Assembly (NCBI GenBank): GCA_025201805.1
Contig: MU619251.1
Coordinates: 124,001-187,766, forward strand
Direction of reading: 5' to 3'
Source of the DNA: Parasitella parasitica NRRL 2501
Lineage: Eukaryota > Fungi > Mucoromycota
DNA: 63,766 nt
Program-made: the position numbers and the translations under genes
In this document: positions 33,020-34,232 of the stretch, in pieces
Layout: each line of letters opens with the position of its first letter
Position numbering within the stretch: position 1 is the stretch's first letter
Notes under the pieces: generated by a model
The model's database searches: none
Told to the model about the DNA's origin: nothing
Seen by the model: only the letters and a program-made list of their open reading frames with translations

Positions 33020-33547
33020 ATGTCAGGATCTACAGGTGATGAGAGCTATATGGCCATGTTAAATAACCCAGTAATCAATCCTGGGCCATCCACAAACACC
33101 AACTTGGAGCAAGAGCAAAAAGCTAATACTAATATCAAACCATGCGTGTTTCCCGCAGTCGAAGAAGCCAAAAACCTCTTGACCAAGGCCACTGAAAATA
33201 TATGTCTTTCATCTGAATCTGACGAAGCTTTTGAATGGATAAACACAGAAATCAAGCAGGAAAATTTACCTACAACAAAAAAAGAACTGGCGCAACTTGG
33301 TCTTATTAGCCATGAAAGTTTGACAGGAAGTCTCACAATCAAATCACTACAAGAGTTTTTGTATGAAGATAATTACAAAGGAATCGTTGCAGCATTCCAA
33401 ACAATCCAAAATGAAAAAGCTTGTGATAGCAAAGTGTATCTTCTAGGAGAAAGATCTGTTATAGTTCTGATACTGTGTATCGTGCAAGATAAACAAAGCT
33501 CAAAGAAAGCGATTGTGGGATTAAAGAGTTTATTAGTTCAAACTTAA
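33020..33547 (+). CDS. NuiA (nuclease A inhibitor)-like protein, 175 aa, intronless
   Basis: LTKATENICLSSESDEAFEWI, KVYLLGERSVIVLIL and terminal IVGLKSLLVQT* align with recalled cyanobacterial NuiA blocks LKQASDGLLFMSESEYPFEVF, QVYRLGEVELDVYVI and LAGISTKVVET*. Confidence 0.8.
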   Translation: MSGSTGDESYMAMLNNPVINPGPSTNTNLEQEQKANTNIKPCVFPAVEEAKNLLTKATENICLSSESDEAFEWINTEIKQENLPTTKKELAQLGLISHESLTGSLTIKSLQEFLYEDNYKGIVAAFQTIQNEKACDSKVYLLGERSVIVLILCIVQDKQSSKKAIVGLKSLLVQT

Positions 33548-33783
33548 CAATAAATATATAAATTTTTCTCAAGACGACGAATATTCAAAACTGTGAGGTG
33601 ATTCATTCATTTGGGTCAATGGCAATTGTTAAAGCAAGTATCAGAGAGATCATGTGATACATTGTCAACCTGTAGGTGCATGGTACTGGTTCCATGTACG
33701 TCTCTGATTTCATTTTTAAGATAGAGCAATCAGTTCTCTCCTTTAAACCTCTTTTCTTTACAAATATAAAACTTCTGATCAAT

Positions 33784-34232
33784 ATGGCTAAAGATAAAAT
33801 CTCAAAGAAAGGTAACTATCGCATTATAGAGCTATACGTTTATTAGTTGTTCATCGAGCTAATTGATGCATTTATATACGAATAGGTTCAAGAAAGGCTT
33901 CTGCTTATAACGTTTTTATCAAGGTAAATCAAAGACAGAACAGGGCAAATGGGATATCCCGTTTAAACAATATGTTGTACTGTAGTCTGAAATCGCCAAA
34001 GTCAAAAAAGAGTATCCTGAAATGTCACATAAGGATGTAAGTTCATTTTAACTCGAATGCACTGCAATCATCTAACATTGCGTTCATCTTTGATTTAGGT
34101 CTTCAAGAAGGCCGTAAGCTTACTAATTTCTAAAAAAAATCGCGTGCAGGGCTAACTAAAATTTCCTTTGCGATATAGGCAAGCAATTGGTCCCACTCTC
34201 CCAGCAATCCCAAGTCTGCAGTAGCATCCTAA
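33784..34232 (+). CDS. 61-aa YABBY/HMG-box-like microprotein; exons 33784-33811, 33886-33923, 33986-34036, 34099-34113, 34179-34232
   Basis: Four canonical GT-AG introns join in frame to give MAKDKISKKGSRKASAYNVFIKSEIAKVKKEYPEMSHKDVFKKAASNWSHSPSNPKSAVAS*. This matches the YABBY pattern SAYNxFIKxEIxxxKxxxPxxSHxxxFxxAAxNW. Confidence 0.88.

What the first reader, a model, noticed from the sequence alone, without database searches (positions are those of the whole stretch)
33020..33547. Fungal NuiA-type nuclease inhibitor that retains both inhibitory residues, with no adjacent nuclease
Seen: an intronless 175-aa ORF whose blocks LTKATENICLSSESDEAFEW, TIKSLQEFL, KVYLLGERSVIVLIL and IVGLKSLLVQT* match cyanobacterial NuiA collinearly, by recollection of that sequence. 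Established: NuiA protects Anabaena from the beta-beta-alpha-Me nuclease NucA by inserting the Glu of its SES loop and using its extreme C-terminal Thr to contact the catalytic Mg. Both features are kept here (SSESD; final T followed immediately by the stop). NucA is homologous to eukaryotic EndoG/Nuc1. Inference: this may be a cytosolic inhibitor (no signal peptide) of the fungus's own Nuc1/EndoG or of nuclease effectors from bacteria. That would be an uncharacterised eukaryotic nuclease-immunity module. Similar uncharacterised proteins probably exist in other fungi, so recent HGT is not claimed.
Basis: partly seen in the sequence, partly recalled or inferred. Interest (0 to 1): 0.8.

Follow-up and report, generated by a model that had tools for sequence, protein, structure and literature searches.

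The report
Fungal NuiA-like nuclease inhibitor gene
This intronless gene of a Mucorales fungus encodes a true relative of the cyanobacterial nuclease inhibitor NuiA that keeps the inhibitor's two key residues. It belongs to a catalogued but unstudied fungal family that most likely holds the cell's own EndoG/Nuc1-type nucleases in check.

Summary
Window 33020-33547 (+) is a 175-aa ORF that passes Pfam's thresholds for NuiA_2 (4.5e-12) and NuiA (2.3e-5). Its AlphaFold model matches the NuiA crystal chain end to end (Z 14.4). Glu66 aligns with NuiA Glu24, and the last residue, Thr175, aligns with NuiA's terminal Thr135.

Both residues are hallmarks of the whole superfamily: 192 of 198 relatives end in Thr or Ser. 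The gene is single-copy, conserved across Mucorales, and appears in contigs of a run that also holds spliced contigs.

The family is not new. Pfam NuiA_2 covers hundreds of uncharacterised fungal proteins (Mucoromycota, Glomeromycota, Basidiobolus, Ascomycota including Aspergillus oryzae/flavus).

New here:
- A fungal-only N-terminal motif (Y-M-x-M/F-L-N-N/K...P).
- Loss, in this protein, of the loop that I recall carries NuiA's second contact site.
- In 201 cyanobacterial genomes, 16 of 17 with a full-length NuiA also have a PF01223 nuclease, usually the convergent neighbour.

The fungus has two unlinked EndoG/Nuc1-type PF01223 genes and no other related nuclease family. The best reading (about 0.6) is a cytosolic inhibitor of those nucleases. 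NuiA_2 is also a candidate for the classical A. oryzae and Neurospora protein inhibitors, which to my knowledge have no assigned gene. No binding or inhibition has been tested. I class it as a new member of a known kind, of moderate interest.

The parts
33020..33547 (+). Complete intronless coding sequence of the NuiA-like protein (175 aa, 19.3 kDa, pI 4.9), stop codon included
   Evidence: ORF list and sequence; Pfam NuiA_2 and NuiA above their cut-offs; collinear orthologues; mass and pI; only copy in the genome
33038..33082 (+). Fungal-specific N-terminal motif, residues 7-21 (D-E-S-Y-M-A-M-L-N-N-P-V-I-N-P). Absent from bacterial NuiA; function unknown
   Evidence: M13, I19, N20 and P21 are invariant and L14, N15, N16 and P17 at least 90% conserved in 29 Mucorales sequences. 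A related D-x-x-Y-M/L-x-F-L-N-K motif occurs in Glomeromycota and Ascomycota members, and none in bacterial-type ones. The model has low confidence here (pLDDT 47-58)
33146..33544 (+). NuiA-fold core, residues 43-175 (alpha/beta sandwich)
   Evidence: VIA-align Z 14.4, rmsd 2.6 A, model 43-175 on 2o3b_B 1-135; Foldseek E 1.3e-6; hhalign 99.8% to bacterial-type NuiA; pLDDT 75-90 over this part
33212..33238 (+). S-E-S-D-E-A-F-E-W loop, residues 65-73. Glu66 (33215-33217) is the counterpart of NuiA Glu24
   Evidence: Aligned to NuiA's S-E-S-E-Y-P-F-E. E66 is invariant and S65 and D68 at least 90% conserved in Mucorales. S and E are invariant in 30 bacterial-type sequences. Many of the ascomycete members examined have Asp here
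33542..33547 (+). Terminal Thr175 codon (ACT) followed at once by TAA; counterpart of NuiA Thr135
   Evidence: Sequence. Alignments and the structural match run to the last residue on both sides. The terminal residue is Thr or Ser in 192 of 198 superfamily proteins examined
33549..33554 (+). AATAAA, a likely polyadenylation signal two bases after the stop codon
   Evidence: Sequence. The run X1 contig covering the gene ends at 33574, 20 bases downstream. This is inference only, since contigs cannot prove an RNA end
33189..33574 (+). Stretch covered at 100% identity by a contig of public run X1, taken as evidence of transcription
   Evidence: The same run holds a contig of the neighbouring gene with a GT..AG intron removed (33921 to 33984), so the run contains processed RNA of this organism

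Best explanation
The gene encodes a small acidic cytosolic protein of the NuiA superfamily (Pfam NuiA_2). It most likely acts as a tight-binding stoichiometric inhibitor of the fungus's own EndoG/Nuc1-type beta-beta-alpha-Me nucleases. These are two PF01223 genes, both with an N-terminal hydrophobic anchor, on other contigs. The proposed mechanism follows NuiA-NucA. The hydroxyl of the free C-terminal Thr175 would coordinate the catalytic Mg2+ of the nuclease. Glu66 of the SES loop would occupy the place of the scissile phosphate. This would neutralise any nuclease that is mis-sorted or leaks from mitochondria into the cytosol or nucleus. The role would resemble that of Drosophila EndoGI, on a different fold. 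Shown: homology, fold, conservation of both residues, single copy, presence in contigs of a run that holds spliced contigs, presence of NucA homologues in the genome, and a tight link between NuiA and PF01223 nucleases in cyanobacteria. Inferred: binding, inhibition, which of the two nucleases is the target, and localisation.
For: Family membership by Pfam, by PDB profile search and by hhalign at 99.8%. The fold matches the NuiA chain of the NucA-NuiA complex end to end, Z 14.4. Glu66 is invariant and the terminal Thr/Ser at least 90% conserved in 29 diverse Mucorales sequences. The same two positions are invariant in 30 bacterial-type sequences. 192 of 198 superfamily proteins end in Thr or Ser. 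The role of NuiA's terminal Thr as a direct Mg2+ ligand is documented in PMC2790893 and PMC5587815. The genome has exactly two PF01223 genes and no PF13930 or PF04231 nuclease. The C8 nuclease matches Drosophila EndoG at 1.8e-72 and NucA itself at 1.6e-17; the C158 paralogue is likewise EndoG-type. Among 201 cyanobacterial genomes, 16 of 17 with a full-length NuiA have a PF01223 nuclease, against 13 of 184 without. In 13 of those genomes the two genes lie within 5.2 kb, mostly convergent with gaps of 45-730 bp. NuiA-family proteins are therefore generally paired with this nuclease family. The protein has no hydrophobic or basic N-terminus. Specific protein inhibitors of fungal nucleases are on record, and A. 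oryzae/flavus has a 170-aa NuiA_2 member.
Against: No binding or inhibition data exist for any fungal member. No complex could be modelled with the tools at hand. The loop that I recall holds NuiA's second contact site (Asp75/Trp76) is deleted in this protein, so the interface cannot be identical. The Pfam NuiA score is only 3 bits above its cut-off. The most conserved part of the fungal family is an N-terminal motif with no bacterial counterpart and no known role, which may point to another partner. EndoG/Nuc1 is normally sequestered in mitochondria, and to my knowledge Saccharomyces manages without such a protein. Divergent tandem NuiA-like proteins occur in cyanobacterial genomes that lack PF01223. 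NuiA-HIT fusions exist in Bacteroidota. The fold is therefore not tied to nucleases in every case. The Fisher test ignores the relatedness of the genomes.
Confidence: 0.6

Rival explanations
1. It is a NuiA-fold protein that has been recruited in fungi to a different partner or process, not nuclease inhibition. The fungal-specific N-terminal motif would be the key interaction element. The Glu and terminal Thr would be kept for a different metal-dependent enzyme or for structural reasons.
For: The N-terminal motif is the most invariant part of the Mucorales family and is shared in related form across fungal phyla, but is absent from bacteria. The NuiA Asp75/Trp76 loop is missing. NuiA-like domains occur fused to HIT/DcpS_C hydrolases and in cyanobacterial genomes without a PF01223 nuclease.
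Against: The two residues that, as I recall, make NuiA's active-site contacts are exactly the ones conserved from bacteria to fungi. A free terminal hydroxyl residue kept in 97% of relatives is hard to explain by fold stability alone. The only known function of the superfamily, and its genomic linkage, is to PF01223 nucleases, which this genome has.
Confidence: 0.25
2. It is an immunity protein against foreign beta-beta-alpha-Me nucleases delivered or secreted by bacteria or competing fungi, rather than against the cell's own enzymes.
For: The same residues and fold would serve. Mucorales interact closely with bacteria (general knowledge).
Against: No evidence of any kind was found. The gene is single-copy and conserved at 1:1 across Mucorales and beyond. 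It lacks the expansion, diversification and patchiness typical of immunity genes in arms races. A self target of the right family is present in the genome.
Confidence: 0.1
3. It is a chance ORF or a decaying relic of an old gene transfer, with no function.
For: None beyond the absence of experimental data.
Against: Orthologues are full-length and collinear, at 26-74% identity, across all major Mucorales families, with invariant motifs. The gene is covered by a contig of a run that holds spliced contigs. The model is confident over the core.
Confidence: 0.02

Closest known systems
NuiA of Anabaena/Nostoc sp. PCC 7120 (PDB 1J57, 2O3B chain B; Pfam PF07924)
   Same: The fold is the same from first to last core residue (Z 14.4). 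The S-E-S-D/E..P-F-E loop has its Glu at the position of Glu24, and Thr is the very last residue. Both are small, acidic and without a signal peptide. A NucA-family (PF01223) nuclease is encoded in the same genome.
   Different: Structure-based identity is only about 17-21%. The fungal protein has a 42-residue N-terminal extension with a conserved fungal motif. The loop holding NuiA Asp75/Trp76 is deleted. The penultimate residue is Gln, not Glu. The nuclease genes are unlinked, whereas cyanobacterial pairs are mostly convergent neighbours. The likely target is a membrane-anchored mitochondrial-type EndoG/Nuc1, which by my recollection acts as a dimer, not a secreted monomeric NucA.
Pfam NuiA_2 (PF23151, 'NuiA-like'), uncharacterised fungal proteins
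   Same: The window's protein is a member (46.8 bits against a cut-off of 27, covering residues 7-171). It shares the N-terminal motif, the acidic loop and the terminal hydroxyl residue with members from Glomeromycota, Endogonales, Basidiobolus and Ascomycota.
   Different: Mucorales members have N-N-P-x-I-N-P after the motif, where ascomycetes have N-K-A-N-x-D-P. Many of the ascomycete members examined have Asp for the loop Glu and end in Ser (A-V-E-S). Mucoraceae have shortened the D-P-x-G-Q loop that most other fungal members keep.
Drosophila EndoGI, inhibitor of EndoG (PDB 3ISM)
   Same: The proposed role is the same: a non-mitochondrial protein that neutralises escaped EndoG. Both inhibitors engage the catalytic metal site (PMC2790893). 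The window genome's C8 nuclease matches the EndoG chain of that very complex at 1.8e-72.
   Different: The fold is unrelated: EndoGI is a two-domain helical repeat that binds via a metal-bound water and acidic loops. This is not a shared family, only a functional analogy.
Protein inhibitors of Aspergillus oryzae nuclease O (Uozumi et al. 1976) and of Neurospora crassa endo-exonuclease (Hatahet and Fraser 1989)
   Same: Both are specific proteinaceous inhibitors of fungal nucleases (review PMC13522737). A. oryzae/flavus encodes a 170-aa, 18.2 kDa, pI 4.4 NuiA_2 member. By my recollection nuclease O and the Neurospora enzyme are Nuc1/EndoG-type nucleases; I did not check this here.
   Different: These are biochemical activities for which I know of no published sequence, so identity with NuiA_2 is a hypothesis. 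The original papers are not in the library and I could not compare sizes or properties.

Membership tests
NuiA superfamily (Pfam NuiA PF07924 / NuiA_2 PF23151) | Profile match above the curated gathering score | tested here: met
   NuiA_2 46.8 bits against 27; NuiA 25.1 bits against 22.1. hhalign to bacterial-type NuiA gives 99.8%, E 5.5e-28.
NuiA superfamily (Pfam NuiA PF07924 / NuiA_2 PF23151) | NuiA alpha/beta sandwich fold | tested here: met
   The top PDB match is 2o3b_B: Foldseek E 1.3e-6, and VIA-align Z 14.4, rmsd 2.6 A over 119 residues, far above the next row at Z 6.9. This is a predicted model with mean pLDDT 77.
NuiA superfamily (Pfam NuiA PF07924 / NuiA_2 PF23151) | Acidic residue of the S-E-S loop (NuiA Glu24) that enters the nuclease active site | tested here: met
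   Glu66 aligns with it. It is invariant in 29 Mucorales and in 30 bacterial-type sequences. The role of Glu24 is from my memory of Ghosh et al. 2007. An E24-D121 contact is mentioned in PMC5374557.
NuiA superfamily (Pfam NuiA PF07924 / NuiA_2 PF23151) | Thr (or Ser) as the very last residue, the direct ligand of the nuclease's Mg2+ | tested here: met
   The Thr175 codon is followed by TAA and aligns with Thr135. The last residue is Thr or Ser in 192 of 198 relatives. The role is documented in PMC2790893 and PMC5587815.
NuiA superfamily (Pfam NuiA PF07924 / NuiA_2 PF23151) | Second interaction site, Asp75/Trp76 (a specificity determinant of Anabaena NuiA, as I recall it from Ghosh et al. 2007) | tested here: not met
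   The loop containing D-W is an insertion in NuiA relative to the Mucoraceae profile and is absent from the window's protein. D-W is the majority in bacterial-type sequences. Other fungi have D-P-x-G/N-Q there. This bears on identity of the interface, not on family membership.
NuiA superfamily (Pfam NuiA PF07924 / NuiA_2 PF23151) | A PF01223 (NucA/EndoG-type) nuclease encoded in the same genome | tested here: met
   Two genes, at G000 C8:372717-373397 and C158:6528-7315. Both are EndoG-type and homologous to NucA. In cyanobacteria 16 of 17 NuiA genomes have one.
NuiA superfamily (Pfam NuiA PF07924 / NuiA_2 PF23151) | Gene adjacent to its nuclease (usual in cyanobacteria) | tested here: not met
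   The genes lie on different contigs, and no nuclease domain is within about 7 kb. This is expected for a eukaryote.
NuiA superfamily (Pfam NuiA PF07924 / NuiA_2 PF23151) | Stoichiometric, tight inhibition of the cognate nuclease | not testable with these tools
   This needs protein biochemistry or at least a multimer structure prediction, and neither was available.
Fungal NuiA_2 subgroup | N-terminal D-x-x-Y-M/L-x-M/F-L-N motif ahead of the NuiA core | tested here: met
   Residues 7-21. The Pfam NuiA_2 match starts at residue 7.
EndoGI (Drosophila EndoG inhibitor) | Tandem helical-repeat domains | tested here: not met
   The model is a single alpha/beta domain, and no EndoGI-like match appeared in the fold search. 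This is a functional analogy only.

The most novel reading that the evidence does not exclude
NuiA_2 proteins, including this one, are the genes behind the specific protein inhibitors of fungal Nuc1/EndoG-type nucleases purified in 1976 (A. oryzae nuclease O inhibitor) and 1989 (Neurospora endo-exonuclease inhibitor), for which I know of no assigned gene. They would use the bacterial Thr-Mg2+ metal-bridge mechanism, supplemented by a fungal-specific N-terminal motif that adapts the inhibitor to the eukaryotic enzyme. Fungi would then have inherited or acquired a bacterial-type nuclease-immunity protein to guard the cytosol and nucleus against their own mitochondrial death nuclease. Drosophila solved the same problem with the unrelated EndoGI.
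Probability: 0.4. Interest if true: 0.7.

Novelty: new member of a known kind. Interest (0 to 1): 0.5.

Why it matters
EndoG/Nuc1 is the conserved mitochondrial nuclease that takes part in mitochondrial DNA recombination and in apoptosis-like DNA degradation. How cells protect their nuclear genome from it is known only in Drosophila (EndoGI).

A widespread fungal family that keeps the two active-site-directed residues of the bacterial inhibitor NuiA is an obvious candidate for that role. To my knowledge it is unstudied. It could also give a gene to two classical fungal inhibitor activities.

The hypothesis is directly testable with simple biochemistry. If confirmed, it would give a handle on the regulation of cell death in fungi. 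It would also provide a compact protein inhibitor of eukaryotic EndoG-type nucleases for laboratory use.

Tried and rejected
- **Direct PDB search.** phmmer of the single protein against PDB sequences found nothing. Only the family profile reached NuiA.
- **NCBIfam.** It has no model for the protein.
- **Literature.** Searches for any study of fungal NuiA-like proteins found none. Hits for 'nuclease A inhibitor' in plant PR-1 papers only cite the NuiA fold paper.
- **Primary papers.** Ghosh et al. 2007 (PMC2072808) and Uozumi et al. 1976 are not held. The roles of Glu24 and Asp75/Trp76, and the properties of the classical inhibitors, therefore rest on my memory or on secondary citations. A search for the residue names found nothing.
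- **Secreted Mucorales nucleases.** Searches for papers on the secreted nucleases of Cunninghamella and Syncephalastrum found nothing. The idea that a secreted paralogue is the target could not be documented. Both nucleases in this genome have an N-terminal hydrophobic anchor rather than an obvious cleavable signal.
- **Tree.** A FastTree of 154 superfamily members recovered an ascomycete clade (support 99) and a Mucorales-containing clade (97). It did not resolve whether all fungal members form one clade, having only 143 columns and many long branches. I make no claim about origin or gene transfer.
- **Bacterial loci.** A single protein gave three loci, which served as the entry point for the cyanobacterial survey.
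- **Other nuclease families.** No His-Me-finger nuclease of families PF13930 or PF04231 is in the genome.
- **Spliced models.** The C158 nuclease and the small neighbouring gene were read exon by exon by reference only.
Full report
**Observation.** Window 33020-33547 (+) is an ATG-to-TAA ORF of 175 codons. The last sense codon is ACT (Thr175, 33542-33544), followed at once by TAA. The protein is 19.3 kDa with pI 4.9. It has no hydrophobic stretch in its first 40 residues, and its N-terminus is acidic rather than basic, so there is no sign of a signal peptide or a mitochondrial presequence.

**Family and fold.**
- Pfam places the protein in NuiA_2 (PF23151; 46.8 bits, E 4.5e-12, cut-off 27; residues 7-171).
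- More weakly, it also falls in NuiA (PF07924; 25.1 bits, E 2.3e-5, cut-off 22.1; residues 50-174).
- NCBIfam has nothing, and the single sequence finds no PDB chain.
- A profile of 25 orthologues hits both NuiA entries (1j57, 2o3b_B) at E 2e-4. It aligns the fungal S-E-S-D..P-F-E-W with NuiA's S-E-S-E-Y-P-F-E-V.
- Profile-profile comparison of 29 Mucorales sequences with 30 bacterial-type sequences gives 99.8% probability, E 5.5e-28. The alignment runs to the very last residue on both sides.
- An AlphaFold2 model built on the orthologue alignment has mean pLDDT 77, with 75-90 over residues 41-175 and below 60 over residues 1-40.
- Its best PDB match is the NuiA chain of the NucA-NuiA complex: Foldseek E 1.3e-6, and VIA-align Z 14.4, rmsd 2.6 A over 119 residues, model 43-175 on chain 1-135. 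The next entry scores Z 6.9.

**Organism and distribution.** The closest relatives are all from Mucorales. They include Parasitella (73%), Mucor, Thamnidium, Rhizopus, Benjaminiella, Cokeromyces, Blakeslea, Choanephora, Gilbertella, Pilobolus, Mycotypha, Phycomyces, Backusella, Circinella, Fennellomyces, Phascolomyces, Absidia, Halteromyces, Chlamydoabsidia, Hesseltinella and Gongronella. Every one is annotated 'hypothetical'.

An earlier agent of this scan named the genome Parasitella parasitica. I did not test this. The NCBI P. parasitica orthologue is only 73% identical, so I leave the species open.

An exhaustive HMMER search found 605 cluster representatives at E up to 1e-3. Named members outside Mucorales include:
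- Calcarisporiella, Jimgerdemannia (Endogonales), Scutellospora (Glomeromycota) and Basidiobolus;
- many Ascomycota: Daldinia, Nemania, Cladophialophora, Exophiala, Fonsecaea, Capronia and Aspergillus, including a 170-aa A. flavus/oryzae protein.

The ESM Atlas lists NuiA_2 clusters of 97-467 members, mostly Ascomycota. The family is thus widespread in fungi and already catalogued. I found no paper that studies a fungal member. The gene is single-copy in this genome.

**Conservation of the two residues.**
- In 29 diverse Mucorales sequences the invariant positions are M13, I19, N20, P21, E66, P84 and G167.
- S65, D68, V139, G143, V173 and the terminal T175 are at least 90% conserved; a few Mucor and Rhizopus sequences end in Ser.
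- In 30 bacterial-type sequences the invariant positions are S23, E24, two glycines and the terminal Thr.
- Of 198 superfamily proteins in hand, 164 end in Thr and 28 in Ser. Nearly all carry S/T-E/D-S/T/A-D/E at the loop.
- Many of the ascomycete members examined have Asp at the loop position and end in A-V-E-S. Aspergillus section Flavi has S-E-T-D and V-E-T.

That NuiA's C-terminal Thr directly coordinates the catalytic Mg2+ of NucA is stated in PMC2790893 and PMC5587815. That Glu24 enters the active site and mimics the scissile phosphate is my recollection of Ghosh et al. 2007, which is not held. An E24-D121 contact is mentioned in PMC5374557.

- First, all fungal members carry an N-terminal extension with a conserved motif. 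In Mucorales it reads D-x-S-Y-M-A-M-L-N-N-P-x-I-N-P, and in Ascomycota D-D-x-Y-M-x-F-L-N-K-A-N-x-D-P. Bacterial-type proteins lack it. It is the most invariant part of the Mucorales family. The model gives it low confidence, and its function is unknown.
- Second, the loop that in NuiA holds Asp75/Trp76 is an insertion in NuiA relative to the Mucoraceae profile and is absent from the window's protein. As I recall from Ghosh et al. 2007, this loop is a second contact site that adds affinity and specificity. Bacterial-type sequences mostly have D-W there, and other fungi D-P-x-G/N-Q.

The interface with any target cannot be a copy of NucA-NuiA. That is what one would expect if the target is a different member of the nuclease family.

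**Candidate targets.** The genome holds exactly two matches to Endonuclease_NS (PF01223): C8:372717-373397 (one exon) and C158:6528-7315 (at least three exons). The window is on C15.
- The C8 protein matches Drosophila EndoG (3ism_A) at 1.8e-72, other EndoG and EXOG chains at about 1e-55 to 1e-66, and NucA itself (2o3b_A) at 1.6e-17.
- The main exon of the C158 gene gives the same ranking.
- Both have the D-R-G-H-M motif and an N-terminal hydrophobic anchor.
- No PF13930 or PF04231 nuclease is present.
- Neighbouring ORFs in the window carry CUE, 6-phosphogluconate dehydrogenase, thioredoxin/PDI-like and PHD domains, and no nuclease.

**Is the NuiA family generally tied to this nuclease family?** I sampled 201 cyanobacterial genomes.
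- Of these, 26 have a PF07924 match, and 17 of them a full-length one at E below 1e-30.
- 29 genomes have PF01223.
- 16 of the 17 have both, against 13 of the other 184. The Fisher p of 6e-15 is inflated, because the genomes are related.
- In 13 of those genomes the two genes lie within 5.2 kb. In 11 they are immediate neighbours, convergent wherever both strands are listed, with 45-730 bp between the matched stretches.
- In three other bacterial genomes the pair is present but unlinked.

This supports reading NuiA-family proteins as cognate partners of PF01223 nucleases. It also shows that the lack of linkage in the fungus departs from the cyanobacterial norm, as expected for a eukaryote. As a caution, weak tandem NuiA-like proteins of 290-450 aa occur in cyanobacterial genomes without PF01223. 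NuiA-HIT-DcpS_C fusions also exist in Bacteroidota.

**Expression.** One public run (X1, kind 'RNA?') holds a 386-base contig identical to 33189-33574. It also holds a contig of the downstream gene from which a 62-base GT..AG intron has been removed. The spliced contig shows that the run holds processed RNA of this organism, so the NuiA-like gene is probably transcribed. The contig ends 20 bases after an AATAAA that starts two bases after the stop codon. That is consistent with a poly(A) site, although contigs cannot prove ends. The 5' part of the ORF was not covered.

**Mechanism proposed.** The protein would be a cytosolic or nuclear tight-binding inhibitor of the fungus's own EndoG/Nuc1-type nucleases. 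Thr175 would bridge to the catalytic Mg2+, and Glu66 would take the place of the scissile phosphate. The N-terminal motif would provide an extra, fungal-specific contact or a regulatory handle. Its biological role would be insurance against mis-sorted or leaked nuclease, as with NuiA in Anabaena (PMC13522737) and EndoGI in Drosophila (PMC2790893). Homology, fold, residue conservation and presence of the target family are shown. Binding, inhibition, target choice and localisation are inferred. I put this reading at about 0.6.

**Link to old biochemistry.** The 2026 review PMC13522737 cites a purified protein inhibitor of Aspergillus oryzae nuclease O (Uozumi et al. 1976). It also cites specific inhibitors of the Neurospora crassa endo-exonuclease (Hatahet and Fraser 1989). 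By my recollection, which I did not check here, both enzymes are Nuc1/EndoG-type nucleases. I know of no gene assigned to either inhibitor. A. oryzae/flavus encodes a 170-aa, 18.2 kDa, pI 4.4 NuiA_2 protein with S-E-T-D and a terminal V-E-T. NuiA_2 is therefore a concrete candidate for these activities. This is the most novel reading the evidence allows; I give it about 0.4.

**Verdict.** The gene is a new member of a known kind (Pfam NuiA_2). Interest is moderate. The gene itself is ordinary within its family, but the family is an unstudied and readily testable candidate for a fungal EndoG/Nuc1 inhibitor.

**Limits.**
- No multimer modelling was available.
- No fungal genome collection was available for co-occurrence tests.
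- The deep phylogeny is unresolved.
- Several mechanistic details of NuiA rest on memory.

Noticed in passing
window 33786-34232 (+): A tiny multi-exon gene lies 240 bp downstream of the NuiA-like ORF. A contig of run X1 shows a 62-base GT..AG intron removed (33921 to 33984). It also shows a second joint (34038 to 34179) with 13 letters between that match a micro-exon at about 34100-34112. By eye the exons encode a small basic protein with an S-A-Y-N-x-F-I-K motif reminiscent of YABBY/HMG-like helices. The joined model was not searched.
   Followed up: partly
proteins P0083, P0087, P0110 (Daldinia, Nemania, Exophiala); alignment A3: Some ascomycete NuiA_2 gene models carry a basic extension of about 80-105 residues ahead of an internal Met, exactly where the short forms begin. 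This could be a mitochondrially targeted isoform, which would put the inhibitor beside Nuc1, or a mis-called start codon.
   Followed up: no
cyanobacterial genomes G023, G104, G130, G158, G102: Open frames of 290-450 aa show two weak NuiA-like matches in tandem, and four of the five genomes have no PF01223 nuclease. This looks like a divergent NuiA-fold architecture not tied to that nuclease.
   Followed up: no
ESM Atlas cluster: Bacteroidota proteins of about 277 aa fuse a NuiA domain to HIT and DcpS_C hydrolase domains (104 members). This suggests the NuiA fold can partner nucleotide-handling enzymes other than NucA.
   Followed up: no
cyanobacterial genomes G035, G062, G098, G102, G150, G152, G156, G166, G192, G202 and G068: nuiA-like and nucA-like genes are immediate neighbours with only 45-730 bp between the matched stretches. 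They are convergent (tail to tail) wherever both strands are listed. One genome (G035) has two such pairs.
   Followed up: yes
whole genome G000: An earlier agent called the genome Parasitella parasitica. The orthologue in the NCBI P. parasitica record is only 73% identical to the window's protein, so this may be a different species or a divergent strain.
   Followed up: partly
L002 (G000 C158:5028-8333), about 1262-2333: The second EndoG-type nuclease gene has at least three exons and an N-terminal hydrophobic segment. Mucoralean genomes thus carry two Nuc1-like paralogues, either of which could be the inhibitor's target.
   Followed up: partly
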